From Macrostomum hystrix (lineage: Eukaryota > Animalia > Platyhelminthes), in assembly GCA_950097015.1 (NCBI GenBank), contig CATNEN010000030.1:4216001-4280000 (forward strand): a stretch of DNA of 64,000 nucleotides, given 5' to 3'. How positions within the stretch are numbered: the first letter of the stretch is position 1; each line of letters starts with the position of its first letter. Below, one piece after another: positions 4,086 through 47,933 of the stretch. The notes beneath the pieces are model-generated. The model was not told the DNA's origin. It was given only the letters and a program-made list of their open reading frames with translations, and searched no databases. The translations under genes were made by a program, and so were the position numbers.

Positions 4086-5112
4086 GAAGGCCTCTCAGAG
4101 GCAATCCACGCACACAGTACTAGATGTTTTGAAATACCGATTTTTTAATATATAGTACGATGGACCAAATTTTCGGCCAAAGCTGGGCCTTCTTCAGGGT
4201 CTGTATATTTAGATAATTCAAACGAAAAAATATTGTTAAAGCGATCGCTTATATATGTGGGGGGTTAAAAACCGTATTGATTTTAAAGTTGGAATTGTAC
4301 ATAAAAAATTATAAACGAACACGGGCACGTTAAAAATAAAACTGTCAATGCCGCGTGCAGTCAGAGTCCTGTCAAAGGTTAAAGCGAATTAATTGTTATT
4401 TATGGGGGTAGCTTGGATGGACATGTCCTTCTGAATGTCCTTCAGAGAGCGTGAGCGTGTGTACGCTGCCACTGTGCTCAAGTCACTGGCATGGTCAGCG
4501 ATAACCGAACGGATTTCGTGTACAATGCGTCCAGAGTGGTCCGTATAAGGAATGACGATGGGGACGCACGCACTACGGTTAGTGTCAATGGAGTTCAGGC
4601 CAGCTGGGGTCTGAGTTTTCAGGAGATTAGTGAGTCTGAGTTCCATGTCTCTTCTCCTGCGTTGAGTTGCCTCTCTGTGCGTCTCACATTCAGGGCTGAG
4701 GTACCAAAGACCCATGAACCGTAAGTCCAGCAGGCTGTGGTCTGTAGAGCGAAAATGTCTTGAGACCGGGGTATCTTTTGCCAGTCTAATGTCGCTCAGG
4801 TGGGCTTGCAGTCGGACTTTAAGGGCCCCTCCTGTCTCTCCAATGTAGACACAACGGTCATTACAGCTCCTGCATAAGATTGAGTACACAACGTTTCTAG
4901 AGTCGCAACGGACTTTTGTGGCAGATCCTATATACCATGTTGGTAGAGTTGGATCCTGGACAGATCTGTCCAAATTGGCCATGTTGTCTACACACCCGAC
5001 AGGTTTCATTATTGCAGTTGTGGAAGCCAAAATCCCACTGGCGGTCGATGAAGAAACCCAGTTGGATGAGAGCGGAGTATTTGGCGTTCCGAATAGAGCG
5101 GACTAGATCTAT
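4086..5112 (-). mobile_element. Penelope-like retroelement (PLE), 5'-truncated: Cys-rich linker, GIY-YIG endonuclease and 3' pLTR/UTR
   Basis: ORF 4389..5030 has RCDSRNVVYSILCRSC..VYIGETG..LKVRLQAH..PVSRHF...H..L...E..L...LKT..PAGLN, the PLE GIY-YIG signature. The upstream frame gives DLVRS...GFHNCNNETCRVC (PLE linker), joined by a 1-nt frameshift near 4915. No RT domain in the window. Confidence 0.88.
4163..4201 (-). ncRNA. Minimal type I hammerhead ribozyme in the PLE 3' region
   Basis: Minus strand GACC-CUGAAGA-A-GGCC-cagcuuu-GGCC-GAAA-AUUU-GGUC: stem I GACC/GGUC, catalytic boxes CUGANGA and GAAA, stem II GGCC/GGCC, loopless palindromic AAUU stem III. Confidence 0.8.
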
Positions 5113-5126
5113 CCGAATCTATCCGA

Positions 5127-5127
<1 letters not shown>

Positions 5128-5160
<33 letters not shown>

Positions 5161-5178
5161 GGATAGATGGATAGACGG
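5128..5178. repeat. (AGAT)n microsatellite, right flank of the PLE
   Basis: Direct repetition, same orientation as the left tract. Confidence 0.9.
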
Positions 5179-5559
5179 ATTAGTTATTAATTTTATCAAT
5201 CGATATTTTCTCCGTTTATTTCCCTTTGTCTGTCTCTATATTAATGTCCCATTTATCCCCAAGTCTCCATTAGCTGCATCACTCTGCCATAATCTTCCAT
5301 AATCTGTCTCCACCTATCTGTTTGTGTAACATCGCTCAGAATATTGCAAGCATTGGGTGTAGGCACACGCGAATACTAGGCCCTTCGATTCCGTTTCCAA
5401 CCCCTGGGGAATTAGAGGAAGAGAAAACACGGAGACAGGAGGCGGAGAAAATGGCCGACGCAATTCGGCGTGTTTTCGCAGACTATTGGCGGGAATAAAT
5501 GGGGTGGGGGCTCAGCCCACCAACCAACCAGATCCGGCCGCCGTCTCTTCTAGCTGAAT

Positions 5560-5844
5560 TTCTATTGGCTGTGACCTGCCCTACTCGGCCACGGCCTCAT
5601 TAACTGACGGCAGGCTCCTCTCGCCCTCCGCCGCGAGCCCCCCAACCCCAACTCAGCTCCACAAAATCCCCACTTAATCCTCTCCTCGCTTGCTGCAGCT
5701 TCCCAGACAGGAAAGAGAATTTAGTCTGCCTCTTGGAAGATCTACTTTGCCGGGCCAGATTTCGCAGATTTTTAAGCCTCGCACACACAGCCGCTCGGAC
5801 TACTGTGCCTGTATAGTCTGCTATTATCCACTGCCATATTCAAG
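5560..5844 (+). promoter_or_regulatory. Putative promoter and non-coding 5' exon of Otx copy A
   Basis: CpG-rich stretch, CCAAT box (ATTGG ~5565), strong donor CAAG|GTAAGC at 5844/5845, candidate acceptor CTGCTTAG|ATCC at 6960/6961 upstream of ATG 7028. Confidence 0.45.
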
Positions 5845-6700
5845 GTAAGCTAATCCCTTCTGCTGCTGCTGCAGTGGCTTGATCCAGTTTTCTTTAAGAT
5901 GCCAGCTCTCATTTATCCAGCGCCTAATCTCTTCATAATGAGACACAATGGCTTAATCCACATTGTTGATAATCCCCAATCTGTGTAGGATTATTTGGGC
6001 ACATTCAGAAGCTGGGCATGCTGAATGTAATCATTGAAGTTCTCTTGCATACTATGTATTACAAAACATTCCATATAGGCTAACATAACTAAATGGAATC
6101 TAATTTGTTTGTTTCGATGCCTGGCAAAACAGGCCTAAAGACTATTTAGTTAATAATACTGTGTACAGGAGGATTGGTGCTTGAGCATATACTCACAGAT
6201 TTCTATCTGCTTCGGCTGAGGCAGATTTTTTAGAACGATTATCGCCGCCTTAGGATTAACTGGGGGGTCGCAGCTAAGGGAGAACAGGTCAGAAAGGATT
6301 TAAGCGGGCCTATATAAACCTGCCTAAAGACTGAGTCTATATGCTCTAAAAATCTTGGAGCCGTGCAGTAGCTGTAGCAGAATTAAATATTTCAGAAAAT
6401 TCCAACAATTATAACCAAATTAATTTAGTAACTCTGGCTTAGTCGCACAGCAGCAACAAAAATGTGCCGATTGCCAAGTCACGTGAGTTCTTATCCATTT
6501 GAGATAAAAAACGTTGAGGTAAATTGTTAGACAGAATTCACTTACAACATTGATATCTGCAGGGGAAGGTAAAACGGAATTGTAGCAATGGGGAGAATTC
6601 ATCTGGCATGCGGTTGCGTGGCACCTAAGCAAAAAGAGCATGCAGAAACATTTTCGCTTCTTGGGAGAAATTTCCCCCCGACTCTGCTGCCCTCTCGGAT

Positions 6701-6960
6701 CCCATGATCGGCGCAGTTTATGAGATCCCACTCTTTAGATCCCTATCGTGATCCCACTCTTTAGATCCCTATAATACGCTCGTAGTAGGGATCCCACTCT
6801 TTAGATCCCTATCGTGATCCCACTTTTTTTATCCCCATCGTGATCTCACTCTTTAGATCCCTATCGTGATCCCACTTTTTTTATCCCCATCGTGATCCCA
6901 CTCTTTAGATCCCTATCGTGACCGCACTCTTCAGATCGCTATAGTGATCCCACTGCTTAG
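6701..6960. repeat. Minisatellite, ~26 bp unit ATCCCACTCTTTAGATCCCTATCGTG
   Basis: About 9 degenerate copies ending at the candidate Otx A acceptor. Confidence 0.9.
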
Positions 6961-7027
6961 ATCCCGCTCTGATTCCGCTCTCAATCAATGCAGCCAACTG
7001 CAACACACTGCAGGCTCAGGCAGCACA

Positions 7028-9612
7028 ATGGACTCCTGGAACAGCTACCAGCCGCACCAGCACCATCATCACCATCACCATCACATGCATAATCTGCACG
7101 CGGGTGTTCAGTCGCAGTTTGGCTACCCGATGCCGGAGGTTACCACTGCGGGCGTCATCAGCGGCGGCGGCAGCGTCGGCAGCGGCGGCTTGTTCGGCTG
7201 CTCGAGCATTGCGGACAACTCGGAGCTCAACGGCCTTTGCGGCGGCGGCGGATTTTCTAACACCCCGATGACACCGAATTTGACAAACTCGGCAGCGGCT
7301 GCTGCGGCGGCCGCGGCGGCGCAGGCGCATCACGAGATGCTGCACCATCCGGCCCTGACGGCCTATGCCAGTGAGTTCCGCTAGGCTTTACTTCTCTCCT
7401 CTCACTCTACTTCTCTCCTCTCACTCTACTTCTCTCCTCTCACTCTACTTCACTCCTCTCACTCTACTTCTCTCCTCTCACTCTACTTCTCTCCTCTCAC
7501 TCTACTTCTCTCCTCTCACTCTACTTCTCCCTCTCACTCTACTTCACTCCTCTCACTCTACTTCTCTCCTCTCACTCTACTTCTCTCCTCTCACTCTACT
7601 TCTCTCCTCTCACTCTACTTCTCCCTCTCACTCTACTTCACTCCTCTCACTCCCCCTATTACCCTCTAAAATATAGCTGCATTGCTTATAAGCAGGTGAT
7701 AATTTTCTCTGCCCTGCGCACTTCAAATTTACTGTGAAGGTCGTGCAAACTCTCCGCCATTAGGGTGATTACCGCGCTCCATTCCCTGCCCACGTATTCA
7801 CCAAGCCATCAGTGTGATTAATCCCGCGCAATAGCTTAATCAGTGCCGAGACGGCACTCGACCCAATCGCCATCGGCGTCTAAAGTCTTGCGCCCGGCCA
7901 TTCTCCTTTGCCACGAATCGTTTCAATCTCGCAGCCGTTTGAATTCGCCCTCAAGCCACAAGCGAACTTGTTAGAATGATTAACTTTTTTTCTCGCCGGT
8001 GGGATTTCTTCATGAATCAGGTGGGATTTCTCGGACCACCTGAACCGGAGCGCCGACACCGGGAAGGGCGGGGGGCGGGGGCGGGCAGGGGGCGGATTCC
8101 AGGGCGGGGATTAGCCATCAGCGGAGAGTAGGCAATATTTTTGTGCGACCACGCGATCGTTCTCAGAGAGAGCCCGATGCTCACAAAGCATTCTTAGCAC
8201 TTCAAAGTAAAGGGTGGAGGCTGGTAGGGCAGGGAGGGGGAGGGGAGCGCCGCGTGTCGCCGCTCACGCGAGGCCGCTCACTCCGCTAAGCCGTCGGTAA
8301 TCCCGAATTGAAAGTATCGCCGAGCCGTGAAAATTCAAGTGGGGCGAAAAAGCCATCAATGGAGGACGGCCGCTGCTACCTGCCACAGCACCCGGCGGTG
8401 CCCCCCCGCTGCTTGTTGACTAACAGCGGCCACCTGGGACAGCTGCCTGCCCGGCAGACAAAGCAAATGAAAGAGCCACAGAAGCTCTCGAGGGCCCCCT
8501 TGTTTCTTAGAAAAGCCATTAGCTCATTCAGCCGGATTCCTGTTACAAACCAGCGGCATGCCATGAAACAATCCGATGGGGAGGGTGCTAAAGGTGATCG
8601 GGCTGCCGCACACCTTTGAATTCTTGAGACTAATTCCAACCGATCTCGATCTCACCTTCCAGCGCCCGTCCGCAAGCAGCGGCGCGAGCGGACGACCTTC
8701 ACCAGGGCGCAGCTGCAGATCCTGGAGGAGCTGTTCGGCAAGACCAAGTACCCGGACATCTTCATGCGCGAGGAGGTGGCGCTGCGCATCAACCTGCCGG
8801 AGTCGCGGGTGCAGGTCTGGTTCAAGAACCGGCGGGCCAAGCAGCGCCAGCAGCAGAAGCAGAAGGAGGCCGGCGAAAAGGCCAACGCGCACTGCGGCCT
8901 GCCAGCGAACTCCGGACAGTCGATCGGACACGGCGGACATTCTGCGAAGACGGCCGCAGGCTCAGTCGGAGGCGGCGTCGGCGCGACAGCTGCGGGAGGC
9001 GGCGGCGGCTGCGGAAACTCGCTGGCCGCTGCTGCAGCCGCCGCGGCCGCCGCCGGCATCGGGGGCGGAGGAGCCATGGCTGTCGGTGACATGCTCGGCG
9101 GCTGCCACCACGACGGCGGCCTTGCACTCGGCGGAGTCGGCGGCGTCAAATGCGAGGACGTCGACTCGAGCAGCCCGTCACCCGCCAAGACGCTCAGCCT
9201 GCCCGGCTCCGCCGAGGCCTCCAAGCGCAGCCCGGCAGCCCAGGCCAACGGCCACGCCGCCGCCGCTGCCGCCGCCGCTGCCGCCCACTTCCTCACCAGC
9301 GACTCGTCCGGCCACTCGGCCGCCGCCTGGGGACCCTCGGCTGCCGCCGCTGCCGCCACCTCCGGCCGCCTCGGTGGGCCGGCCAGCCCGCCGACCTCCG
9401 CCTACGCCAGCTGCGTTCAGCAGCAGCACCGCAGCGCCGCCGCCGCTGCCGCCGCCGCAGCCGCAGCCGCCGCCTACCACAACCAGACCTACGGGCAGTA
9501 CAGCGCCACCGGCTACCCTCCATACGACTACCTGCGGCCCTCCGGCTACCCGCAGCAGCCCACGGACTATGACTACCAGGCCTGGTCCTCGCGCAAGCTG
9601 CAGCTGCTCTGA
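7028..9612 (+). CDS. Otx: Otx-family homeobox protein, copy A; exons 7028-7370 and 8663-9612 (~430 aa)
   Basis: A phase-1 GT-AG intron (7371-8662) restores [63 protein letters not shown], the Otx K50 homeodomain. The intron sits at the conserved Otx pre-homeodomain position. His- and Ala-rich tracts; AATAAA at 10002. Confidence 0.93.
7388..7650. repeat. Minisatellite, 19 bp pyrimidine unit CTCTACTTCTCTCCTCTCA, in the Otx A intron
   Basis: Direct tandem repetition. Confidence 0.93.
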
Positions 9613-12600
9613 GCTGCTGTACTCAGTGGCATCCTCAAAATGGTCTGTGCTCGCTCACGTAGGCAATTACAGCTTTTATTCTATGATTTTGACACCAGCA
9701 ATCAAATCGTATTATCTTTTGTCTCCTTTCATTTTGCTGATTTTGAAATGCTCTTTTTGTTCTCTTTCTGATTCTGTTGTTTTGTCCACATTGAATTAAC
9801 ATTTTTTCCTAGAACTTTCTCTGCTGCTTTCTTGTGTGTACAAATTGAATGCAAGCTATAATCCGCGAACCCTGCAATTGTTAGTAGAGTCCAAAATGTC
9901 TCATGTACTGAACAGAAGAAAGTTCACCGAATTTTCGTTTTTTTCACGTTTGTTTTGGTTGATCGCCTAGTTGATATTAAATCCAATGGACGATAATTAT
10001 AAATAAAAGTGCATCTCGAAAAGCTTCTTAATCAAGCTCTTAAGCTCGAATATAGAAAAAATACTAAACGTTAAACATGCACTGATTGAGTTTTTACTCA
10101 ACTGATCAACGGATCAGCTGATTTGGGGAGCAATGGGATCTCAGGGGAGGTCACTAGGATCAGCTGATTTGGGGAGCAATGGGATCTCAGGGGAGGTCAC
10201 TAAGGATCAGCTGATTTGGGGAGCAATGGGATCTCAGGGGAGGTCAATGAGGATCAGCTAATTTGGGGAGCAATGGGATCTCAGGGGAGGTCACTGAGGA
10301 TCAGCTGATTTGGGGAGCAATGGGATCTCAGGGGAGGTCACTGAGGATCAGCTGATTTGGGGAGCAATGGGATCTCAGGGGAGGTCAATGAGGATCAGCT
10401 GATTTGGGGAGCAATGGGATCTCAGGGGAGGTCACTGAGGATCAGCTGATTTGGGGAGCAATGGGATCTCAGGGGAGGTCACTGAGGATCAGCTGATTTG
10501 GGGAGCAATGGGATCTCAGGGGAGGTCACTGAGGATCAGCTGATTTGGGAGGTCACTGGGAATCAACTGATTTGGGGAGCAATGGGATCTCAGGGGAGGT
10601 CACTGAGGATCAGCTGATTTGGGAGGTCACTGGGAATCAACTGATTTGGGGAGCAATGGGATCTCAGGGGAGGTCACTGAGGATCAGCTGATTTGGGAGG
10701 TCACTGGGAATCAACTGATTTGGGGAGCAATGGGATCTCAGGGGAGGTCACTGGGAATCAACTGATTTGAGGAGCAATGGGATCTCAGGGGAGGTCACTG
10801 AGGATCAGATGATTTGGGGAGCAATGGGATCTCAGGGGAGGTCACTGAGGATCAGATGATTTGGGGAGCAATGGGATCTCAGGGGAGGTCACTGAGGATC
10901 AACTGATTTAAGGAGCAATGGGATTCCACTGAGAGTTAACTCACGAGAGGTCAGAAGTTAGTCATTTAATGTTCTCAATCGCTGACCATGAGAATTAGCA
11001 AGAGAAGAATTTATGTTTTAACGCGTTTGAGTAGCTAACTGACTTATTATTTATTTTATGTCAAATATAGAAGCCTGGTGCAAAAAGTTAATTAAGTTTT
11101 AAATAGATTTTTCTATATAAAAAAAGAAAAAAAATTGCATTTCTACTGTATACCGTAAAATCCCCTAAACACTAGAGAACTAGAAAACTAAGCAAAACAG
11201 ATTGGGAACAGGGCTACACACGACAGCAAATGGATGAGGCGAGGACAGCTGTAAAATCCTGCCATAGAATCATTAATTCACCAACAATGAGTGTCAGCTC
11301 ACTTAAGTAATAAATATTACTTAGACAACACACAAGCAGCTAAATCTATAGGCACAGTTACCTTTGCGAACTGTACAGTCAAGTGCGTAATCTGCCCCAG
11401 TAAAATCTATATTGCCTGCATGGGGGAAATAGCATTGGGTGAATTGGGAGGGGAGCATGAAAAGGAATTTAGAATCGCACGAATCGCAGTTGGATACAAA
11501 GGGCATTGCTCAGATGCGAGAGATCAGCAAAGTATTCTAATATGCTGACAGTGACGAATGCGCTGCAAATATTGCAATAAAAAGGACTTGTGCTTGCTAT
11601 ACATTACAATAGACAAAACACGAACAGCGAAATCACAAGAGAACAAAGAGTTTAATGTCAGTTAAGAGCAGCTCAGACTGTCTTAGAATTGAGTACAGCA
11701 GCTCAGAGCAGCTGCAGCTTGCGCGAGGACCAGGCCTGGTAGTCATAGTCCGTGGGCTGCTGCGGGTAGCCGGAGGGCCGCAGGTAGTCGTATGGAGGGT
11801 AGCCGGTGGCGCTGTACTGCCCGTAGGTCTGGTTGTGGTAGGCGGCGGCTGCGGCTGCGGCGGCGGCAGCGGCGGCGGCGCTGCGGTGCTGCTGCTGAAC
11901 GCAGCTGGCGTAGGCGGAGGTCGGCGGGCTGGCCGGCCCACCGAGGCGGCCGGAGGCGGCGGCAGCGGCGGCAGCCGAGGGTCCCCAGGCGGCGGCCGAG
12001 TGGCCGGACGAGTCGCTGGTGAGGAAGTGGGCGGCAGCGGCGGCGGCAGCGGCGGCGGCGTGGCCGTTGGCCTGGGCTGCCGGGCTGCGCTTGGAGGCCT
12101 CGGCGGAGCCGGGCAGGCTGAGCGTCTTGGCGGGTGACGGGCTGCTCGAGTCGACGTCCTCGCATTTGACGCCGCCGACTCCGCCGAGTGCAAGGCCGCC
12201 GTCGTGGTGGCAGCCGCCGAGCATGTCACCGACAGCCATGGCTCCTCCGCCCCCGATGCCGGCGGCGGCCGCGGCGGCTGCAGCAGCGGCCAGCGAGTTT
12301 CCGCAGCCGCCGCCGCCTCCCGCAGCTGTCGCGCCGACGCCGCCTCCGACTGAGCCTGCGGCCGTCTTCGCAGAATGTCCGCCGTGTCCGATCGACTGTC
12401 CGGAGTTCGCTGGCAGGCCGCAGTGCGCGTTGGCCTTTTCGCCGGCCTCCTTCTGCTTCTGCTGCTGGCGCTGCTTGGCCCGCCGGTTCTTGAACCAGAC
12501 CTGCACCCGCGACTCCGGCAGGTTGATGCGCAGCGCCACCTCCTCGCGCATGAAGATGTCCGGGTACTTGGTCTTGCCGAACAGCTCCTCCAGGATCTGC

Positions 12601-12685
12601 AGCTGCGCCCTGGTGAAGGTCGTCCGCTCGCGCCGCTGCTTGCGGACGGGCGCTGGAAGGTGAGATCGAGATCGGTTGGAATTAG
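8630..12685. repeat. Long inverted repeat: arms 8630-9625 and 11690-12685 (996 bp each), 2064 bp spacer
   Basis: Arms are reverse complements; the only difference I found is A9358 versus G (minus strand, 11957). Confidence 0.93.
10112..10925. repeat. Minisatellite, ~47 bp unit GGATCAGCTGATTTGGGGAGCAATGGGATCTCAGGGGAGGTCACTGA, between the two Otx 3' ends
   Basis: Direct tandem repetition with shorter sub-unit variants. Confidence 0.93.
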
Positions 12686-12926
12686 AATCGATCTCAAATT
12701 TAACTCAAACCTGTACTCATTTTTCTACTGTACTCAGTCAGGTGTGCTCACTTGAGTAGGCGGAAAGTGCCGGATGGTGCAGCATCTCGTGATGCGCCGG
12801 TGGGGTCGGAATGCCAACACCAAGGCTGCCCATCATGGCGAAGCTCTGCTTGCCCAGCCCGCCGGATGTGCTGGCGTGCGGATTGTAGTTGAACTGCGAG
12901 CTGTGGTGATAGCCGCCCCACTCCAT
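11703..12926 (-). CDS. Otx: Otx-family homeobox protein, copy B; exons 12926-12752 and 12652-11703 (~374 aa)
   Basis: MEWGGYHH...[15 protein letters not shown], then a 99-bp phase-1 GT-AG intron (12751-12653), then the same homeodomain exon as copy A. Confidence 0.92.
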
Positions 12927-13013
12927 GGCTGGTCTGGCGCTTCGGCTCTGAGACAGGCGGGATTTTATCAGTCTGTTTGAGAACTGTTGAGTCTGGATCT
13001 GAGTGCAGCCGGG

Positions 13014-13480
13014 ATGGGAGCGGAACAAGAGGGGGCGGAAAGGAGCGGAACAAGAGGGGGCGGAAAGGAGCGGAACTAGAGGGGCGGAAAGGAGCGGAAC
13101 TAGAGGGGCGGAAAGGAGCGGAACTAGAGGGGCGGAAAGGAGCGGAACTAGAGGGGCGGAAAGGAGCGGAACTAGAGGGGGCGGAAAGGAGCTGTGCTAG
13201 AGAGGCGGAAAGGAGCGGAACTAGAGGGGGCGGAAAGGAGCTGTGCTAGAGAGGCGGAAAGGAGCGGAACTAGAGGGGGCGGAAAGGAGCTGTGCTAGAG
13301 AGGCGGAAAGGAGCGGAACTAGAGGGGGCGGAAGGGAGCGGAACAAGAGGGGCGGAAAGGAGTGGAACTAGAGGGGGCGGAAAGGAGCGGAACAAGAGGG
13401 GCGGAAACGAGCGGAACTAGAGGGGGCGGAAAGTAGCAGAACTAGAGACGCGCGGAAACGAGCGGAACTAGAGGGGCGGG
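13014..13480. repeat. Minisatellite, ~24 bp unit GGAAAGGAGCGGAACTAGAGGGGC, upstream of Otx B
   Basis: Direct tandem repetition. Confidence 0.93.
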
Positions 13481-14363
13481 AGAGGAGGGAGGGAGCGGAT
13501 TGACGAAAAGTAGTCGAAACGGAGTGGCAGTGTTTCGGAACGGGCAGATCGGTGAGGAAGGGTCTAAGCTGTGAGCGAGTGCGTCAATATTTTCCTGCCA
13601 GTATTTCCAGCAGCATTCACTAATCGAGAGAGAAGCAGCTGGTGAAATGCTAGAGCCTACGCATGTCGATGAAAGCAGGGAGGAAAGCAGGGACAGACAC
13701 GGGGGAAACCTGAGAGCATGAAAATGGCTCCGCGGGCTGACACACCACAGGCCGCCGGGGCAAAGATTGGGAATAGGAACTGAAGCGTGCTCGAGGTTAA
13801 TGGGGCTGCCTCAGATTTCTGAGCTACGCGGAGCTGAATGGGCCGAGTTTGTCAGTGAGGGCGCGGGCAACACTAATCCGGGAGACGATGAAGGAGGAGG
13901 TGGGTGGTCAGGTGCGGACCCGCGCTACTATCCACAGCGAATAAGCTGAGTTAGACTGGCTGACTGACTGAGTGCAGGTGAGCCGCGTGTGCGAGAATTC
14001 AACATCCTTGTTGACGCTCCCGGGCCGTTTGGGGTTGGGGGTTCGAGTCGACTTGATGGGGGGCAGACACGCTCTGGGAATGATGGAACCGGAGTGGCAG
14101 GGATTAGCAGGAATGGACGCAGACTCAGGTTGCTTCGATGTAGTTAAAACACAGTGAGAGACTCAGCTAGAGCCGGCTGTCAGTGGGGGGGGGAGGAGGT
14201 GAGTAGTCAGTGCTCAGGAACCGGAGCTGAGCGCGTGGAGGCGAAATGGAGGTGCCCCGGCGGTCCCCTGTTGCCCCACCTGAGCCGCGGAAGCTGAGGC
14301 GGCGGCAACGGCGAATTGTCAGGGGACGGGGGGACGAGCGATAGTGGAGTGGAGCAGACTCAC

Positions 14364-14520
14364 CTTTTCCAGCCCCTTTGAGCAGCTGCTGCTTTGAATG
14401 TGAGTTGGGGCTCTCTGCAGGGGCATTCTCTGTATTCACTCCGGGCCCATTTTCCCCATTTTGTGTCTCCGCAGAATTCCCTTCAGGGTCTGCCATGCGA
14501 ATGGGGGATTAGGGATTAGA
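14364..14520 (-). other. Putative upstream 5' exon of Otx copy B
   Basis: Strong donor AAAG|GTGAGT at 14364/14363 and candidate acceptor CACTCAG|ATCC at 12999/12998, mirroring the 5' exon layout of copy A. Confidence 0.35.
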
Positions 14521-14944
14521 GGACTGAAAACATGTCACTCTGATGGCATGGGAAGCCGCGCGCGTGTGTGTGTGTGTGTTGGGAGATGCGCTCTGAGCCC
14601 TAAGGGACTCTCTCGAGACAAAACAGCTCACGAACAGTTTCTTCTCCGAACCAAACCAACTTGGGCAAGGCGAATGGGAAGAAAGAAAGATAGAGTGTGG
14701 GGGGAAGCGAATAATATTTTCTCCCATTTTGGGAGAAATATGGCCAAATTGTTGTCTTCAGTGAAACTGAGGGGCTAAGACTTTGAGTTTGAGCACGCGA
14801 ATTGTTAAGTAGAATTCGTAGGCCTACTAGCGACAACATATGGCAGCAGATATACCCAGTTTATACTCAACTGCCAAAGCTTTGCTCAGGCAAACTGATA
14901 TTTGTGGGGCGACATTTTCGAGGCCCACCCGGCCGGAGGGGCGG

Positions 14945-15430
14945 ATGGTAGCGGAAAGATGCAAATCCGAGGGCGGATACGAGTGGAAGGGCGGATACGA
15001 GTGGAAGGGCGGATACGAGTGGAAGGGCGGATACGAGTGGAAGGGCGGATAGGAGCCGAAAAACAGATAGAAGCGGAAAGGCGGATAGGGGCGGAAAGGC
15101 GCATAGGAGCGGAACGGTGGATAGGAGCGGAAAGGTGGATAGAAGCGGAAAGGTGGATAGAAGCGGAAAGGTGGATAGAAGCGGAAAGGTGGATAGAAGC
15201 GGAAAGGTGGATAGAAGCGGAAAGGTGGATAGAAGCGGAGCCGAAGAGCGGATAGGAGCGGAAAGGCGGATAGAAGCGGAAAGGGGGAAACGAGCGGAAG
15301 AGCGGATAGAGCGGAAGGGCTAATATGGAGCGGAAGGGCGGATAGGAGCGGAAAGGCAAATAGGAGCGGAAGGGCGGATAGGAGCGGAATGGCGGATACG
15401 AGCGGAAGCCGAAGGGCGGATAGGAGCGGA
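14945..15430. repeat. Minisatellite, 18 bp unit GATAGAAGCGGAAAGGTG and variants
   Basis: Direct tandem repetition; explains the repetitive ORFs at 14827-15492. Confidence 0.93.
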
Positions 15431-16729
15431 AGGTCAAAAAGCAGCGGAAGGGCAGTGTCGGGCCATAGCTGCAATAGTCGCAGGTCACTCACCGTATGCG
15501 GTTGCGGTATGAGTATTAATAACGATAATCAGCTTCTCCGTGTCCTGTGCTGGGATATCCTCAAAGCCGAATGATTGCCTTGCGAAGATAGGGAGGGATA
15601 AAACCGAGGGGCAGGGAATGGGAGAACTTGCCGCGCCTTGTCCCGCTGGGGGGATTAAGAAGGGATTGGGGATGCCGGGGATCGAGGAGTGGGTGGGTGG
15701 AGACAAAGCTGGCTGGATGGAAGTGAAAGCGGCAACTGCGTCAGGAATGGACCAAGGCAAGTGAGCTCAGGCTGTGGAATACTCGACACGGACTGCTCAA
15801 CCTCTAGGAGACGATGCAGGCTAAGTACGGCAAGGAAATTGTTCGCTTGCAGTTGCGGCCCAATGCGACTTGTTCGGCCATTCTGATTGGCTGGCGTTTG
15901 GGCGATGTTCTGCGAATGCGTTCTCGGATTGTCATTGGTCATGGGTTCGAATCCTGGGTTCGGATGAACGTCTAAAAGAAAAGTATGCAAAAGTTTTGTT
16001 GGCTGTTGACTTGAATTGTTTGAATTTCATTATATTTATGCGAATTTCATGGAATTTCATATCCCTGGAATACTTATTACCAGGCACATTTATCCCATTG
16101 TTGCTTATAGGGATTAGCTCTCAGACTCATAAGAATGCAGGAAAAAAATAGCTTAGATTGAAAAGCACGGGTTGCGTGTCCAGACAGCCTTGAGCGCCGA
16201 TTTTTGCTGCTTTTCCACCTGACAACAGGGGCCTTGCGGGAGAAGAAGCCCTGGCTGTATTTTGTCTTGAAAAAATGATCTGATTTTTTTAATTAACTGA
16301 ACAGGTTGTGAAGAATCAAATTAGCAGCATAACGTTTGAGTCCAGGGGCTTCTAGATATAGTGGAAAAAAGAGAATTCTCTGGATCACTTTGACCCGAGA
16401 GTATGACTAATATTATAGCATCAGAAGCAGCCTGTATGGATTACTCGTTACAAAAGTCTATATGCAGGATTTGCTGGGTCTACAGTTGCAAACTTATGGC
16501 ATATCGATTTGGAAGCCTTAGTCTCAGAGTGCACTCTGTGTCTGCTAGACTAAATCCAATTCAAAACCAGCTTTAAGTTTCGAAATTATTATAAAATTTG
16601 TGTAAAATAAAATTCTGGCAACGCAAAACTAATTAGATTTCAGTAAGTTAAGAGCAACTTGTCCTTACAAATCTTCACACGCTCATCTAGAGATCTTCAC
16701 AGGTTTATTTTGAGATTTTCACATGTTCG

Positions 16730-17535
16730 TCTTGAGATCTTCACACGTCTATCTAGAGATATTCACAAGCTCATCTAAAGATCTTTACAAGCTCATCTAG
16801 AGATCTTCACAAGCTCATCTAGAGATCTTCACACGTCTATCTAGAGATATTCACAAGCTCATCTAGAGATCTTTACAAGCTCATCTAGAGATCTTCACAA
16901 GCTCATCTAGAGATCTTCACAAGCTCATCTAGAGATATTCACAAGCTCATCTAGAGATATTCACAAGCTCATCTAGAGATATTCACAAGCTCATCTAGAG
17001 ATATTCACAAGCTCATCTAGAGATCTTCACACGTCTATCTAGAGATATTCACAAGCTCATCTAGAGATCTTCACACGTCTATCTAGAGATATTCACAAGC
17101 TCATCTAGAGATCTTCACAAGCTCATCTAGAGATCTTCACAAGCTCATCTAGAGATCTTCACAAGCTCATCTAGAGATCTTCACAAGCTCATCTAGAGAT
17201 CTTCACAAGCTCATCTAGAGATCTTCACAAGTTTATCTAGAGATCTTCACAAGCTCATCTAGAGATCTTCACAAGCTCATCTAGAGATCTTCACAAGCTC
17301 ATCTAGAGATCTTCACAAGCTCATCTAGAGATCTTCACAAGCTCATCTAGAGATCTTCACAAGCTCATCTAGAGATCTTCACAAGCTCATCTAGAGATCT
17401 TCACAAGCTCATCTAGAGATCTTCACAAGCTCATCTAGAGATCTTCACAAGTTTATCTAGAGATCTTCACAAGTTTATCTAGAGATATTTACTTATTCAT
17501 CTAATGATCTTGCCACGCTTATCTAGAGATTTTCA
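16730..17535. repeat. Minisatellite, 22 bp unit TCACAAGCTCATCTAGAGATCT
   Basis: Direct tandem repetition. Confidence 0.95.
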
Positions 17536-19054
17536 CCTGATATCTGCATATTCACACCCATCAAATCTAGATTATTTTTAGCAGAAAAAAGCTAACAAAG
17601 CAAGGAAGAAAGAAATGTAAAAGCAGCCGATGCCGAGTTCAATTCGAAGGCAAATTTTCGGGATTCTGAGATCGGTGCGGAGGACACGGCAGCGGAAACT
17701 AATTATCGAGAAATCTTTTTCCCCAATCGAGCCGACGAAATGGGGAGAGGCCGACGGCAAGGTGGTGTGAGGATAATCTGTTTGTCGGCTAGTTTTCCCG
17801 CAAAATTTTATTTCCCAATTTATAGGGGTGGCGGGGGTTGCGAAGGCCGCTCTGAAAGACACACAAAAGGATGGAGGGAATTATAAGATGAAATCCAAAG
17901 AAATTCATTTCCCTTTAACTGGCGCGCAGGCAGCCAAAGAGCCTGCCTGCCATTCTCATTTCCGCCCTGGGAAACTTTGGGAAAAGGAGGATGGGGTGGG
18001 CGAACGTTGCCAGCGAGCTGAGCTAATCTCCCAGGGAAGAAACAAAATAGTTTTAACACAGAAAGCGCGAGGAAGACGGAGGGACAGAGTTCACAACGGT
18101 GGGAAATTATTGACTAGGACGCAGATTTCCCCGCTCCACCCAAAAGCAGGCAAGTCCTAATCCCTCAGCTTCTCCGCCCCGACCTCCCCCTCCTCCTGGG
18201 CCGCGGGGTCCGCCCGGTGTGTCGGACTGGGGAAGGAACAGCGGCGGCTGCGGCCGCGGCGGCGTCGGCGGCGGCAGCGGCGGCGGCGGCAGGGGGCTTA
18301 GTGTGGGATTAAATCCCAAAACTGTGATGAGGCAATTTCGCGAATTCTGCGCTCGAGGGGGTGGGGAGGAGAGGAGGACAAGGAGGGCAGCGGCCGCGCC
18401 CATTTTCACAGCCTTTTATCTTTGTTTTGCCCAAAATAGCCGAGGGTTTTCAGTTGCTGCAGGCTTTCTGTGATAGCACCTGTCCGGGCGCGATTTTACA
18501 CCATCTTCGCCAGGCCAGGCAGGGAGGCCGTTTCTTAGAAATAAATAAATCGAAAAGGCTGAGCCTACAGTAGAGTAATAAATAGATTGCAACTTATAGA
18601 TTTGAAGACACAGCTCAAGCGTCAAATGCCTGACTAGAAATCATTGGATCTGGCATAGCTGACAGTTTATGATGGCTATTTGGCGCGATCTGGACCCGCA
18701 CACCTGTGCGGCGCAGACAGCTGCGGACCAGATCGATATCAATTTAAGTAGCAGGGCCGCACTGCTGAATAAGTTCAGGGCCTGCGGGTAAAGGGGCAGA
18801 GCAGGGAATTTCTTCCGATCTCATCAGCTCAGGCTTAACCTTAGATCAGCCTCATAAAATGGCAGCTGGGCTGACAGCCCGGCCCGCTATCGCTCTGAAC
18901 CAGATCGGCTGACAGGGAAATCTAGGAGAAAATCTTCAGCGGTGTGACGGGGCTGTTTGATGGACTGTAAAAAATGCTGCGACAGATTTCACAAACAGCG
19001 GATGGCAACAGAAATTCCAAGTCCATTGTCCTGAGAATAGAAAGAGACACCCAG

Positions 19055-28489: not shown

Positions 28490-30663
28490 CTAATTCCAGA
28501 AGTCACCGGCTGCGAAAGCAGACTGCTGCTGTTGCTGCTGCTGTTGCTGCAGCTGGTTTCCGCCGGGATTCGCAGCATTGCCGGAGCCTTTAAAGTTCAG
28601 GCCAGCCATCTGGCTCTGAATCTGCGTTGTTTTTGAGTCGGGTTTGAGTTTGAGTCGACTATTAAATTAGTTTTCTACTTTATTAACAAATCTAAAATAC
28701 GTCAGTCTGTGACACTTTGCGTGCGACTGAAGGCACAATTCTAGTACTGGCTGCTGTCATCGATAATCAGTTCAGGTCAGTTAGTGGGTCATCGATAATC
28801 AGTTCAGGTCAGTTAGTGGGTCATCGATAATCAGTTCAGGTCAGTTAGTGGGGTCATCGATAATCAGTTCAGGTCAGTTAGTGGGGTCATCGATAATCAG
28901 TTCAGGTCAGTTAGTGGGGTCATCGATAATCAGTTCAGGTCAGTTAGTGGGGTCATCGATAATCAGTTCAGGTCAGTTAGTGGGGTCATCGATAATCAGT
29001 TCAGGTCAGATAGTGGGGTCATCGATAATCAGTTCAGGTCAGTTAGTGGGGTCATCGATAATCAGTTCAGGTCAGTTAGTGGGGCCATGAAGCAATCAGT
29101 TGAAAATATTTTCTATTTGCATCCTCCACTATCAAGACAAACAATTCGTCATCTTACGATACATAACACTACAGACAGTTAATGTTAAGAAACGAGTCCT
29201 TTCTTCCTTTCTAATTTCTTTCTCCTAACGCCTATCAGTTGATTAAGTTAGTACTGTTAATTATTGACTGCCTAAAATAAATCGAAAATAATTAGAAACC
29301 AACTTACCTGCTGCAAATATGCTGATTGATTGTTAACATAGCCGGGTGGTTGAAAGCCATAGTACTGCTGCTGCTGCTGCTGCTGCTGATACTGGTCCAC
29401 CTGTTTCTGATAAGACGGCGCAACACCGCCAAACTGAGGCGGTCCGAATTGGCCACCTGTAGAATACAGAGCCCCAGCTGTCTGGCTGTACAGGGCGGCG
29501 AACTGCTGCGGCTGCTGCAGCTGCTGCAGATGCTGATGAGGCTGCTGCGGTGGCATCTGGTGATAACCACTAGGTACAGTCGCAGTTGCCAGGTGAGGCG
29601 TACTAACAGAATATTGCATTCCGCCAAAGTGCTGCTGCTGTTGCTGGTGAAGCGGAGGAGCCAGAAAGTTGCCGCCAGCCGCGCTGACGCCGCCGACGCC
29701 GGAGGAGCTATTGTACAGTGCCATAATAGAGTCCTTCATCGATTTCTTCTCGGCGCCATCGCCGCCATCAGTCAATCCGCCGCCGAATAGGTCGGCAGCC
29801 GGGCCGGCAGTCGCGCTGATGGCGCTGCTTTCGTTGAGAAAAGCCAAATCGTTGGCGTGGGAAGTTGCGGAACCACCGAAGCCACCGGCTCCTCCGCTAG
29901 TGAAGTCGCCAAAGCCGTCATCCGTTAAGCCGCCGAGTAGATCGACCTGAGTTGCCTTCTGCTCGACTATAGCTGTGGCTGCGGCGACGACGGCTGGGGC
30001 GGCAGCGTGCTGCTTTGGCTGCGGCTGCTGCTGCTGAGCTTCAGGCTGACTGGACATAGGCGAAGGCGCAGACTTGGTTGGCGCCGCGGCTGCTGATGCG
30101 GCCGAGCGCCTTCCGCCAGACGGCGCCGGCGCCGGAGCCGCCAATTTTGTCGAGGCGCCATCAGTAGGGCCAGCTGCTGCTGCTGCGCGCCTCTGGGCGG
30201 CGGCGGGTTTCAAAAGATCATACACAGAGGTTGGGTCAGGCTTTGGCAGCACCCAGTCCCTAGCCAAGTAGCGCTTCTCCTCGTATTTGGACTTGATGAA
30301 CTGCTCCAAAGCGGCGTCTGTCTGGGGCCGCCGAAATCCGTCTGGAACATTGGCCTCGTAGGCGGCGCGGGCCACCGAGTTGCCTATGGCGGCAACACCG
30401 GCCACCTGCTCGGCTGTCCAGGAGTCCAAGTTGACGGACTTCACCCGGGAGATGTGCACGCCAAGCTTCCGGTGAATGCCGGCGCAGCGGATGCAAAGGA
30501 AGACGCCGATGTTCCAGGAGGCCCAGCGGGGACTCTTGGCGTCGCAGTCGGCACAGTACTTGTTGTCCTCATCGCGAAGCAGCACAGCCAGGACGTCCTG
30601 GAGTAAGTCCTTCTCACTTTTGCCAGTGGCCGATTTGGCAGTGCGCGGTTGCTGACCAGACAT
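28490..30663 (-). CDS. SMAP1: SMAP-type ArfGAP (stromal membrane-associated protein 1/2-like); exons 30663-29308 and 28621-28490 (~495 aa)
   Basis: [51 protein letters not shown]...[21 protein letters not shown] ArfGAP zinc finger; [12 protein letters not shown] motif; donor CAG|GTAAGT at 29308; last exon [10 protein letters not shown]...DFWN*. Assignment to SMAP1 rather than SMAP2 cannot be resolved. Confidence 0.9.
28757..29085. repeat. Minisatellite, 33 bp unit TCATCGATAATCAGTTCAGGTCAGTTAGTGGGG, in the SMAP intron
   Basis: About 10 tandem copies. Confidence 0.94.
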
Positions 30664-31908
30664 GGGTCTCTGATTGACTTTGCTGGAGAAAATTTGCAAC
30701 TTACTGGACAGGGGACCTCTTTGCAATTGGTGTGGCCCCAGAGCTGTAATATTTTATCATTTAATGAGCTAATAACCATATTTCTTTATTGTATGATATT
30801 CAAAGTTACAAAAATAGATAATACTTTTAGTCGGATTTCTAATACAATTGAATTAAAAAAACTTTTTTTGAGGCAAATAGCTAATTTTTTAAGCAAGTAA
30901 CCAGTCAGGGGGCAAAAAATGGCAGGTAGAGACCAAGGTTTTAGTAGCCGTGGTAAGTGCTCACACTGTAGACTACTTTCAACAAGTGTCTCGCACCTTT
31001 GTGGTGCAGTTGAATATTTAGACTAGGTCTGTGCTTTTTAATCATTTTAACCAATCTTCTTTCACCCTAGTATACAGGTGTCTTAGTTTTTCCAATATAG
31101 GAAGTTTTCTGTTGAACAGAACAAGTAAATTTGTTGAGAACACTTGCAGCCAGGGAACACGGGATTTGAGTCTGCTGACATATTAGCCAACTTTGGTAGT
31201 GACAAAAGCAACTTTGATAATTGATATTGTACTATTTGTGAAGGGATTTTTCTAATTGTTTTTCAACAATTTTCAATAAGCCACTCTTCCTCAATAACAT
31301 TCTTGCTATTAATATTCAAAAATAAATATATATATATATAGACATAAAGTTGCAAGTAGCTATCTTCAGAGAAAAGATAGATTAATTTTTGTGTGACAGA
31401 CTTTCCAATAATCACTTATTCAATAAAAAAGCATAAAGATTTCTATTTTTTGTTTGTCCATATCATCCAACCTTCTGTATCCTAATCCAACCTAAACAAG
31501 CTAAATATGTCACATGTGAAGTTCTTTATTAAAAAAATCAGATATATCAATAGCTGCTGATTTTAAGAACCTTCAATGGTCAATGCAATTTCTTAGCACA
31601 AAGGTAATTTATATTTTCTTTACCTCTTTCAAACCTGACTCCCACTTCTACTATAGGACTAGCAACCATATAAACCATAGTATTTGCCTTCAATGACTTT
31701 ATTTGAATTTTAAATGCCTCTGACTTTCAGGTTTCTTGCTATATGCCTTAGTATTTACCAAGTGACCAGTTAGTTTAAGCTAGTTTTTTAGGTTTGGAAG
31801 AGTTAGAGTTAGGAATAAAGACAGAATCACAGAGTCCTCTCTATTTTGGCCACCCTGAAAACAAATTGGCTAATAGCCTTGCCAAGGCTGGTTTGACAGG
31901 TTTGCTTT

Positions 31909-34172: not shown

Positions 34173-35284
34173 ATGCCGGGCGACAACAAGGAAAACGGCG
34201 ACCCTTATTACTGCTCTGAGCAGATTCAGATCCCGTCCTCCCTGCCAGACATCCTGAAGCAGTACACCAAGTCGGCGATTCGCACGCAGCCTCCGGATGT
34301 TCTAGCCTGGTCCGCCGCCTATTTCCGCGCCATGGCCAATGGCGAAACGCCACCAGTGAAGGAGCGCCTAGAAATGGCTCAGGCCACGCAGAAGACCGAC
34401 ACGGGCCTCACACCCGGCCTGCTGCGGGTGCTCAACAAGCAGCTGGGTCCCAAGAAACAGGTCGAAGTCAGCGACATCACCGAGAAATGGAAGGCATTGA
34501 ATCTGCCCGAAGAACGACTGCAGGAGCTGTTCCAGGTGAGACTCAGTATCAATCATAATGTCCATCAAGCTAGCTAAATGCTTAATATAATACCCGTACA
34601 TTTACAAAATACAAAAAATTTTATGACGTATGAATGAATCGGCGATCGAAGACCGATAATAAAAAATCATAATATTTTGTATTATTACTAATAAACAGGT
34701 TTGCACACCAGCCCTGTCTTTTTAATAATCACGAAGTATAGCAACTCACTTTGCCTTGGGAGTTCGTCCTTTAACATTCCCCTACGATTCTCTCCGCGGC
34801 TGCGCCCCATTTATAGATGGCCTTTGCCAAGGATTCGAGCTCGGGGATCTTGGCGTGAGAGCCAGTCACGTTAGCCTCTCTACCAGCCAGTCCCCTTGGT
34901 TTAAGATGGGGATACAGAGTTGCATTGGTTTATAGACTGTTTATCATCGTTTTTTTTCAACCCTCAAATTAGATTGGCGACTTCACTGGCAAGGTGGAGT
35001 GGCTGAAATTCTTCGCCGTGGCCTGCGCCTCTCTCTGCAGCGACCTCAGCGGCACAATGAAGCTCATCTGTGAGCAGCTGACAGCCGATCCGGAGGGCGG
35101 CCCGGCCAGGGTCAACTTTGACACCTGGAAGCGCCTGTACGCCTACCTGTACGAATTGAACGCCGAGGCGGATCCGCAGGTGATGGAGGCGGCCCTGGGC
35201 TACCTGGCCTCCGATGTCGAGCGTCAGAAGGGTGTCATTCAGCCTAGGAACTTCCTGCACCAGGACTGCCCGCCGCTGCAGTGA
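34173..35284 (+). CDS. ROPN1L: Ropporin-1-like protein; exons 34173-34535 and 34973-35284 (~224 aa)
   Basis: RIIa-type D/D domain QIQIPSSLPDILKQYTKSAIRTQPPDVLAWSAAYF, ATQKTDTGLTPGLL and LTADPEGGPAR motifs; phase-0 GT-AG intron. Confidence 0.93.
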
Positions 35285-40100: not shown

Positions 40101-41555
40101 AACAATAGGAAGACCGCGCTATTCTCCTACTGCCACTGCCTACTTTACGATGGCAACCAAACCTAATGACCGATTTTCGAGAAAGTTCACCATCGTTACT
40201 TGATGAAATTTTGTGAGCAGAAAAATTATGCCTATATTGGTGGCTTTTGCCACCAGACACACTGACGAGAATCGTTGAATATCTCGACGATGCCAATGTT
40301 TTGTGATTCTGAAAGTTGTTTCAACGGATAGAGCGGAATATTTTAGCACGTGTTCTGGATTTTCATGGACATTTCTGTGAATATTTCGGGTGCATTTTAA
40401 ATACCCCCTTTGTCTTTCTACTGTTAATAAGAGTTCTAAGATCCGATTTCTAAAGACTTGTAGCCTAGTAGAGCGTCGGACTTGCGACTTGAAGGTCGGG
40501 GGTTCGATTCGCGACTTCACTGGAACAATTTGTGTCCTTTAGCAAGACACTTAACCATGGCTTCAGTTCACCCAGCTGCAAAAATGAGAATCTGTGTGGC
40601 GTCATCCAGACTGAACAGCTGTACGCAACCTTCAGATGCGCCGTTTTCAATCAATCCATTTAAACTTCTGCCCACACGGGTAAAGAACATTTCCGTGACC
40701 AACCTTAACCCTGGCAGCACCAGCCGAGGCGCCATTGTCATCGAATAACGGGACGCCACCCGGCGCTCGCTTGGCTCCGTCTCTGATGATCTCGTCTCGA
40801 CTTTTGATTGCGTATCTGGGCTCCGGCTGCTGTTGCTGCTGGCTGCGCTTGTACCGAGCCGATGCAGCCAGTGTCGCAGCTGCCTCAGTAACCGTCTCCT
40901 CGTTGCCGCGCCTCGGGGCCGGCGCCGCCTCTTCCGGATAGAAGCCGACCGCCTCCTTGCCCTTCCGCTTGGTGGCCTGCACCGGTGTGACAATGCCGGC
41001 CAGATCCTTGCCCAGGCCCTTGCCCTGCTTGTAGCCCATCTGTTCCAGCAGCTTCATGCCGATGCCGCGGGTGTGCCTCTCCCACTGGCCGAAGCCCTGC
41101 TCAGCCTGGGCCTGGTGCTGCTGCCGATGCCGGTCCCCAGAGGAGGCCGGCTTCTGCTGCCTGCGCTCGGCCTGCCGCTTCTCAATCAGCCGGACGCTCA
41201 GCAGCTCCTCGTCGCTCTCGTCGGTGATGTCGCCGCCAATGCCGTCGACGTCGCCATTGTTTTCCCCCTCGGCGTCATCGTCGCCGGCTGATTTAGTCGA
41301 CAACTGGCCGCCCTTGACGCCACCGCTAATGAAATTTATTGGACCAGCGTTGGCAGCCCCACCGCGGCGGCGGCGCCGATTGCCGAAGCCTCGCCGGCTG
41401 CTGCCGTCGCTGGAATCTTCCGAGTCGCTGGCGAACACGCCGGCCCAGGCCTGCTTCTTGGTCTGGCGCTTGCGCTGAGCCAGCGGATCCATCGAGTACT
41501 TCCAGTCTGCTCCAGTCATGTCGAAGCGCTCCATCTCCTCCTCTTCATCGTCCAT
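37181..41555 (-). CDS. TFIP11: Tuftelin-interacting protein 11 (Ntr1/Spp382 ortholog); exons 41555-40704, 40009-39191, 38402-37989, 37540-37181 (~814 aa)
   Basis: TIP_N region ([11 protein letters not shown]), G-patch [37 protein letters not shown]|[11 protein letters not shown] junction, GCFC repeats (WHPSD, W..WYAGW) and C-terminal GKQVFNFG...W.PVSL. All introns are phase-0 GT-AG; the exon 2 donor could alternatively be 39182. Confidence 0.93.
38668..38995 (+). mobile_element. tRNA-derived SINE family 2, in TFIP11 intron 2
   Basis: tRNA-like head (GTGGTACAGCGGTTAAAGCG...TCGATTCC), body shared with 19255 and 51352, 3' hairpin GGCTGCGGG/CCCGCAGCC. Confidence 0.8.
40103..40423. mobile_element. 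TTAA-flanked non-autonomous DNA element, in TFIP11 intron 1
   Basis: TTAA at 40099-40102 and 40424-40427; 12-bp imperfect TIR (10/12) CAATAGGAAGAC / GTCTTTCTACTG; interior shared with 53580-53800. Confidence 0.65.
40459..40653 (+). mobile_element. tRNA-derived CORE-like SINE family 1
   Basis: B-box GGTTCGATTC followed by TGTGTCCTTTAGCAAGACACTTAAC...CTTCAGTTCACCCAGCTG, a CORE-type motif. Confidence 0.8.
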
Positions 41556-47622: not shown

Positions 47623-47653
47623 GAATCTGAGACAGTCAGGACTGCATTGTACT

Positions 47654-47933
47654 CATACATGCGCAACCTCCCAAATCTTAGCCGGCTATGCGACTTAGTT
47701 TTTGCTCTCATTTGTGACTTAGTTCGTTTCATTGCTCTATTTACGACTTTGTTTGCTCTCATTTGCTCTCTTTTTCTCTCCCCTTTTTCCTTTTCTTCAC
47801 GCCTTCCTTTTTTGTTGCTTGGTCCCCCCTGTGATTTTTTTGCACTTAGTTGATTGGTTTTTGCAACTTACCTTGCTTGGCCCTCGTTTCACCGGCCAGT
47901 TCGGCCAAGTCAGCCGGGTGTTGTGCATGTATG
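47654..47933. mobile_element. MITE copy 2, same family, inverted relative to copy 1
   Basis: Reverse complement of 46454-46746 apart from a short indel; same TIRs; no recognisable TSD. Confidence 0.85.

What the first reader, a model, noticed from the sequence alone, without database searches (positions are those of the whole stretch)
7028..12926. Inverted Otx paralog pair: old divergent first exons on a homogenised homeodomain exon
Seen: two convergent Otx genes. Their first coding exons (343 vs 175 nt) cannot be aligned except for short motifs (M[DE]..[19 protein letters not shown]), and their introns differ (1292 vs 99 bp). The 996-bp blocks 8630-9625 and 11690-12685 differ at one base that I could find (A9358/G11957, Thr/Ala), with no indel even in the poly-Ala GCN tracts. 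Identity starts ~33 nt into the intron and ends 13 nt after the stop, tracking the exon. Inference: an old duplication whose homeodomain/C-terminal exon is kept identical by recent or ongoing gene conversion between inverted arms, while the N-termini and promoters diverge. The result would be two transcription factors with one DNA-binding/C-terminal module and alternative N-termini.
Basis: partly seen in the sequence, partly recalled or inferred. Interest (0 to 1): 0.85.

Follow-up and report, generated by a model that had tools for sequence, protein, structure and literature searches.

The report
Flatworm Otx twins share converted exon
Two old, back-to-back copies of the head-patterning gene Otx in a Macrostomum flatworm have different first exons but the same second exon, most likely because they keep overwriting each other by gene conversion; this is known from other homeobox pairs, but I found no report of it for Otx.

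Summary
Two convergent two-exon Otx genes carry 996-bp inverted arms (8630-9625, 11690-12685) differing at one base; exon 1 is 343 vs 175 nt.

It is unlikely to be an assembly artefact: short-read contigs of the likely source run are about 2x deep over the arm and break exactly at both arm ends.

The pair looks old and the identity recent. Outside its end motif, exon 1B is closer to M. lignano Otx than to exon 1A. A wild relative's A-type copy differs from the arm by about 3%. A third Otx with the same homeodomain residues where read is only 89% identical in DNA, so selection cannot explain the identity. The homeobox has GC3 68/68 (58/68 in M. lignano), suggesting repeated GC-biased conversion.

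Not shown: expression of gene B, or conversion in a second species. The A-side 3' UTR is in an RNA-like run. Both upstream regions are rich in the Otx site TAATCC.

The same pattern is published for Capitella Dlx and engrailed/invected. This scan noted similar pairs elsewhere in this genome (e.g. odd-skipped, 71 kb away; unchecked). New member of a known kind; probably M. hystrix (inferred).

The parts
7028..7370 (+). OtxA coding exon 1 (114 codons + 1 nt; poly-His, Gly-rich, poly-Ala, ends in [15 protein letters not shown]; GT donor at 7371)
   Evidence: an independent contig of it in run X1 (loose ends at 12747 and 12798)
7371..8662 (+). OtxA intron, 1292 nt; 19-bp minisatellite 7389-7652; three TAATCC sites; last 33 nt lie in the arm and begin with a CTAAT branch-point-like motif
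8630..9625 (+). Left arm of the 996-bp inverted repeat (homogenised tract)
8663..9612 (+). OtxA exon 2 coding part: K50 homeodomain (about 8680-8850), poly-Ala/Gly region, WGP (WSP-like) motif, Otx tail, TGA stop
9613..10031 (+). A-side 3' UTR; AATAAA at 10002; the end near 10031 is inferred from the length of an X2 contig, assuming colinearity
9626..11689 (.). 2064-nt spacer between the arms: two unrelated 3' UTRs separated by a 47-bp minisatellite (10111-10924)
11050..11702 (-). Putative B-side 3' UTR, AATAAA at 11055-11050; not seen in the RNA-like runs laid
11690..12685 (-). Right arm of the inverted repeat
   Evidence: source-run contigs 163-177 deep vs 60-86 for single-copy contigs
11703..12652 (-). 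OtxB exon 2 coding part, identical to OtxA exon 2 except Ala for Thr at 11957
12653..12751 (-). OtxB intron, 99 nt (33 nt in the arm, 66 nt unique)
12752..12926 (-). OtxB coding exon 1 (58 codons + 1 nt; colinear with M. lignano Otx exon 1; ends in [15 protein letters not shown])
7324..7353 (+). 30-nt exact run shared with 12769-12798(-): possible second short conversion tract over the conserved Otx pre-homeodomain motif
   Evidence: (I8)
5177..6258 (.). Seven TAATCC (K50/Otx consensus) sites upstream of OtxA
   Evidence: 7 vs 1.7 expected, p=0.002
13874..18311 (.). Nine TAATCC sites upstream of OtxB
   Evidence: 9 vs 2.0 expected, p=0.0002

Best explanation
An old inverted (tail-to-tail) duplication of Otx in a Macrostomum flatworm. 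The two exon-2 copies lie 2 kb apart as an inverted repeat and repeatedly serve as repair templates for each other (ectopic, GC-biased gene conversion, inferred). Conversion persists only where selection has kept the copies colinear, from the branch-point-like motif to just past the stop codon. Indels and minisatellites in the introns, UTRs and most of exon 1 broke homology, so those parts drifted apart. The result is two K50 homeodomain proteins with one DNA-binding and C-terminal module, different N-termini, promoters and 3' UTRs, and probably mutual or self regulation through TAATCC clusters. Shown: anatomy, two copies in reads, old exon-1 divergence, arm identity younger than the split from a wild relative. 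Inferred: the conversion mechanism, its recurrence, expression of B, and regulation through TAATCC.
For: One difference in 996 nt, none at about 247 synonymous sites or 46 non-coding sites. Source-run contigs are 163-177 deep on the arm vs 60-86 single-copy, and end exactly at 11690 and 12685. Exon 1B without its end motif scores higher against M. lignano exon 1 (z=7.0) than against exon 1A (z=4.4). Wild metagenome X6 has an arm joined to an A-type intron, with 15 substitutions in 495 nt plus a codon insertion; the six listed ones are all synonymous. The chance of at most one difference in 996 nt at 3% is 2e-12. A third Otx in the same genome has 23 differences over 206 nt of homeobox, the 17 listed all silent. 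Homeobox GC3 is 68/68 vs 58/68 in M. lignano (p=0.0014) and at most 60/68 in the third paralog (p=0.006); G/C-versus-A/T differences favour the arm 13:1 and 9:1. Leftover similarity past the 3' edge p=0.007. The same layout is read as conversion for Capitella Dlx (PMC3199776).
Against: No second species with both copies was found. Only one M. lignano Otx type turned up, it matches the third paralog at the C-terminus, and it is alone within 10 kb. X6 gave only an A-type copy at depth 3-5. Exon 1B and the B-side UTR had no coverage in X2 or X7. High GC3 could partly reflect codon selection. The 5' edge similarity is not significant.
Confidence: 0.72

Rival explanations
1. One-off recent event: exon 2 of OtxA was copied once onto an old, separate Otx first exon (single long overwrite, or partial inverted duplication making a chimera). 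B may be young as a whole gene, weakly expressed or decaying.
For: Gives the same near-identity. Exon 1B resembles the M. lignano gene that matches the third paralog. No B copy in X6 and no B transcript in X2 or X7.
Against: A single copy event would not raise homeobox GC3 to 68/68. Both tract ends coincide with functional limits (branch-point-like motif, stop codon). Decayed similarity past the 3' edge, a 30-nt exact run in exon 1, and a three-codon length difference from M. lignano shared by A and B with diverged synonymous sites point to older shared history. B keeps an intact donor, frame and TAATCC-rich upstream region.
Confidence: 0.2
2. Assembly or polishing artefact: the arms really differ, or one is a false duplicate, and polishing made them the same.
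For: The probable assembly was made with canu and polished with Arrow and Pilon (PMC10468722), which can homogenise repeats. Logan contigs drop small bubbles. Three repeat stretches of the arm were skipped by the reads tool.
Against: Assembly-independent short-read contigs show the arm as single contigs at 1.9-2.9 times single-copy depth, which allows at most about 0.3% divergence, with branch points at both arm ends. A-side junctions occur in two other samples (X2 3' side, X6 5' side) and B-side junctions in X1.
Confidence: 0.04
3. Purifying selection alone keeps exon 2 identical.
For: The homeodomain is 60/60 identical to M. lignano.
Against: Identity covers synonymous sites, poly-Ala tract lengths, intron and UTR bases. 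The third paralog and M. lignano encode the same homeodomain with 11-12% DNA differences. The rest of exon 2 is only about 36% identical to M. lignano.
Confidence: 0.01

Closest known systems
Capitella teleta Dlxa/Dlxb tail-to-tail pair (McDougall et al. 2011, PMC3199776)
   Same: Convergent homeobox paralogs, divergent proteins overall, DNA identity at silent sites running a few bases into the intron, read as proximity-based gene conversion.
   Different: There the tract is about 150 bp of homeobox plus 31 bp. Here it is 996 bp, a whole exon including the fast-evolving low-complexity C-terminus, at 99.9%, with arms only 2 kb apart.
Hexapod engrailed/invected concerted evolution (cited in PMC3199776; the original paper was not available)
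   Same: Convergently transcribed homeobox duplicates with conversion of the homeobox.
   Different: Shown across many insect species (own knowledge). Here only one lineage has both copies in hand.
Otx/orthodenticle family; M. lignano BOX15_Mlig008535g2 (P0002/P0218)
   Same: K50 homeodomain 60/60 identical, same intron position before the homeobox, same pre-homeodomain motif and same C-terminal tail.
   Different: The M. lignano gene is single within 10 kb, and its C-terminal GYVAYDYL matches a third paralog in this genome, not the A/B pair (GYPPYDYL).
Inverted duplicates under concerted evolution: Drosophila Hsp70, alpha-amylase, trypsin; Y-chromosome palindromes (listed in PMC3199776)
   Same: Arm-to-arm conversion in closely linked inverted copies.
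   Different: Those homogenise whole genes. Here the homogenised part is one exon of a developmental regulator, leaving different N-termini.

Membership tests
Otx/orthodenticle homeobox genes | PRD-class homeodomain with lysine 50 and closest to Otx | tested here: met
   Pfam Homeodomain; K50; 51-55 of 60 identical to named Otx proteins, 60/60 to M. lignano; nearly all named best hits are Otx/Crx/otd
Otx/orthodenticle homeobox genes | WSP motif after the homeodomain | tested here: inconclusive
   Only a diverged AAAWGPS at the expected place
Otx/orthodenticle homeobox genes | C-terminal Otx tail and pre-homeodomain (EM.HP..GY-like) motif | tested here: met
   Tail [13 protein letters not shown] vs DQTSSWKFQVL; [11 protein letters not shown] vs VEMMHPAMGY
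Concerted evolution by ectopic gene conversion (Dlx / engrailed type) | Sharp-edged tract of silent-site identity between otherwise old paralogs | tested here: met
Concerted evolution by ectopic gene conversion (Dlx / engrailed type) | Paralogs closer to each other in the tract than a copy is to its counterpart in another lineage | tested here: met
   A vs B 0.1%; A vs the A-intron-linked arm of wild sample X6 about 3%. One side only: no B copy seen in X6
Concerted evolution by ectopic gene conversion (Dlx / engrailed type) | Both paralogs present in two or more species, tract grouping by species and flanks by paralog | tested here: inconclusive
   No second genome with both copies found
Concerted evolution by ectopic gene conversion (Dlx / engrailed type) | GC enrichment of the converted tract (supporting feature) | tested here: met
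   Homeobox GC3 68/68 vs 58/68 and at most 60/68; codon selection not excluded
Concerted evolution by ectopic gene conversion (Dlx / engrailed type) | Shared polymorphisms between copies in a population | not testable with these tools
   Needs phased long reads from several individuals
Two functional transcription-factor genes | Both first exons transcribed and spliced to exon 2 | tested here: inconclusive
   An RNA-like run (X2) holds part of exon 2 plus the A-side UTR ending about 25 nt after AATAAA; no splice joint, exon 1B or B-side UTR seen

The most novel reading that the evidence does not exclude
The conversion is kept by selection and acts as a 'shared constant exon' device. Two promoters and two N-termini stay locked to one co-evolving homeodomain/C-terminal module, both under TAATCC feedback. 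Crossing-over between the arms could also flip the 2-kb spacer and swap the 3' UTRs. With the odd-skipped, ovo and other pairs noted by the scan, this would make domain-limited conversion a recurring way in which Macrostomum keeps duplicated developmental regulators.
Probability: 0.15. Interest if true: 0.7.

Novelty: new member of a known kind. Interest (0 to 1): 0.45.

Why it matters
It is an unusually clean, whole-exon case of concerted evolution in a core anterior-patterning gene. Practical consequences: trees built on homeodomains will date this duplication as brand new, transcriptome assemblies will collapse it, and exon-2 probes or RNAi will hit both genes. The pair is also a natural test of what the Otx N-terminus and promoter contribute when the DNA-binding domain and C-terminus are held constant, in a small transparent animal.

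Tried and rejected
Searches for A/B counterparts in other Macrostomum species found only one M. lignano gene, in two annotations. JGI metagenome scans gave no Macrostomum Otx. P0226/L002 is an unrelated Otx.

Paper searches found nothing on Macrostomum Otx, on Otx with gene conversion, or on Macrostomum gene conversion. The original engrailed paper was not held.

The two 3' UTRs do not align beyond chance overall (score 41 vs null 34+-5).

An ancestral single gene with alternative first exons, split by a recent inversion, is disfavoured: X6 already has the A intron joined directly to the arm, and the model needs breakpoints at both functional limits.

Selection alone and allelic haplotypes (if M. 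hystrix SR1, F about 0.998, PMC10468722) were rejected.

Full report
Observation. The region holds two convergent two-exon genes. The inverted arms 8630-9625 and 11690-12685 are 996 nt with one difference (A9358 vs G11957, Thr/Ala) and no indel. Exon 1A is 7028-7370 (343 nt) and exon 1B is 12926-12752 (175 nt); both end in phase 1 before a GT donor, with introns of 1292 and 99 nt. Identity begins 33 nt before the acceptor, at a CTAAT branch-point-like motif, and ends 13 nt after the stop. The first exons are homologous (z=10.6; z=4.4 without the end motif) and share an exact 30-nt run over AHHEMLHHP. Five of the next six codons differ.

Identity of the genes. Exon 2 encodes a K50 homeodomain, 51-55/60 identical to named Otx proteins and 60/60 to Macrostomum lignano BOX15_Mlig008535g2. 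It has an Otx-type tail and a diverged WSP motif; the exon-1 end motif matches the general Otx pre-homeodomain motif. The organism is a Macrostomum flatworm. M. hystrix is my inference, from the few long pieces in this scan and the 2023/2020/2022 run sets that fit PMC10468722; the tools hide the name.

Real or artefact. In Logan contigs of the probable source run X1, the unique flanks are 59.6 and 69.4 deep and other single-copy contigs 62-86. The arm contigs are 163-177 deep, read no other letters, and end exactly at the arm limits, as a de Bruijn graph does where two flanks meet one shared sequence. Even against the deepest single-copy control this allows about 0.3% divergence at most. The arm joins the A-side UTR in run X2 and an A-type intron in metagenome X6. 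Contigs drop small bubbles and three repeat stretches were skipped, so a few hidden SNPs remain possible. X1 and X2 both read the B letter at 11957, so A9358 may be an error or a private change.

Old pair, young identity. Without the end motif, exon 1B scores higher against M. lignano exon 1 (z=7.0) than against exon 1A (z=4.4). So the A/B exon-1 split is deep, or 1A evolved fast. X6 holds a wild relative whose arm differs at 15 of 495 nt plus one codon insertion, the six listed substitutions all silent; one of its two contigs runs on into an A-type intron. The A junction therefore predates that split, while the two arms here became the same after it (P=2e-12 for at most one difference at 3%). 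X6 gave no B copy, at depth 3-5.

Not selection. X1 and X2 also reveal a third Otx elsewhere in the genome. Its homeobox differs at 23 of 206 nt (the 17 listed changes all silent), and its C-terminal GYVAYDYL matches the M. lignano gene. An unchanged homeodomain thus tolerates 11-12% DNA change, against zero change at about 247 synonymous and 46 non-coding sites between A and B. Outside the homeodomain, exon 2 is fast-evolving (about 36% identical to M. lignano overall) yet still identical between the arms.

Recurrent or once. The homeobox of the arm ends every codon in G or C (68/68), against 58/68 in M. lignano (p=0.0014), at most 60/68 in the third paralog (p=0.006) and 0.55-0.76 in neighbouring genes. 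G/C-versus-A/T differences favour the arm 13:1 and 9:1. That is what long exposure to GC-biased conversion predicts and a single copy event does not, though codon selection is not excluded. Decayed similarity continues past the 3' edge (p=0.007) but is not significant at the 5' edge (p=0.09). The 30-nt exact run in exon 1 may be a second short tract.

How it likely works. The arms are 2064 nt apart in inverted orientation, so a break in one can be repaired from the other (inference from general recombination knowledge). Homology survives only between the branch site and the stop codon, where selection prevents indels. Elsewhere minisatellites (7389-7652, 10111-10924, 13016-13487) and indels ended the exchange. 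The products would share DNA specificity and C-terminus and differ in N-terminus, promoter and UTR. TAATCC, the K50/Otd consensus (PMC6004077), is the top-ranked of 2080 hexamers in the repeat-masked non-coding DNA of 5100-18900 (20 vs 5.0 expected; not enriched in the rest of the window). Seven sites lie upstream of A, three in intron A and nine upstream of B. The interval was chosen after seeing the sites, so this suggests but does not show feedback on both promoters.

Expression. Run X2 (44 Mb of contigs, RNA-like by size, my inference) has a contig of exon 2 plus 406 nt starting with the A-side UTR, which would end near 10031, about 25 nt after AATAAA. Exon 1B and the B-side UTR have no coverage in X2 or X7, and no splice joint was seen, so B expression is open. 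A crossover between the arms would flip the spacer and swap the UTRs, which short reads cannot detect.

Comparison with known cases. Capitella teleta Dlxa/b are a tail-to-tail homeobox pair with a converted homeobox running 12 nt into the intron, and the same paper cites engrailed/invected, Hsp70, amylase and Y palindromes (PMC3199776). This locus works like those and meets the tests I could run; the cross-species test is inconclusive. It differs in that a whole 1-kb exon, including the low-complexity C-terminus, is homogenised. I found no paper on Otx conversion or on Macrostomum Otx. Earlier scan notes list similar mosaics in this genome (odd-skipped 71 kb away, ovo, HHAT, EPDR, cGLR, EGFR). 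They are unchecked AI notes and are not used as support.

Verdict. A real feature, first reading supported, new member of a known kind. Recurrent conversion 0.72, one-off overwrite 0.20, artefact 0.04, selection alone 0.01. Interest 0.45.

Noticed in passing
run X1 contig 4 and X2 contig 9, laid on window 12448-12653 and 11806-11829: A third Otx paralog elsewhere in this genome: homeobox 89% identical in DNA, C-terminal GYVAYDYL as in M. lignano Mlig008535.
   Followed up: partly
window 5100-18900: TAATCC is the most enriched hexamer around the Otx pair, upstream of both genes; candidate auto- or cross-regulatory enhancers.
   Followed up: partly
run X7 contig 21 at window 11689/11690: A low-depth RNA-like contig of a differently labelled organism is identical to the arm and stops one base past the arm's inner edge; could be a branch to two UTRs, or chance.
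   Followed up: no
L001 about 12370-12500: The M. lignano Otx in GCA_002269645.1 has an apparent frameshift after YHNQTYS, so protein PAA62285.1 has a wrong C-terminus; the UniRef version P0218 has the proper tail but a spurious long N-terminus.
   Followed up: partly
window 46454-47933: A second inverted repeat of about 300-nt arms (84-93% identical) about 1 kb apart, probably a MITE or fold-back element.
   Followed up: no
window 4389-5030 (-): GIY-YIG-like ORF of a Penelope-type element just upstream of OtxA (read from sequence only).
   Followed up: no
window 29272-60057: Neighbouring genes by eye: SMAP/ArfGAP (29272-30726), an RIIa-domain gene (34173-34577), TFIP11 (37900-41555), DNAJC17 (42136-43059), exportin-7 (52573-60057); usable for synteny searches.
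   Followed up: no
whole window: Very dense GC-balanced minisatellites (14-47-bp units), including arrays next to both Otx start codons and between the 3' UTRs.
   Followed up: no
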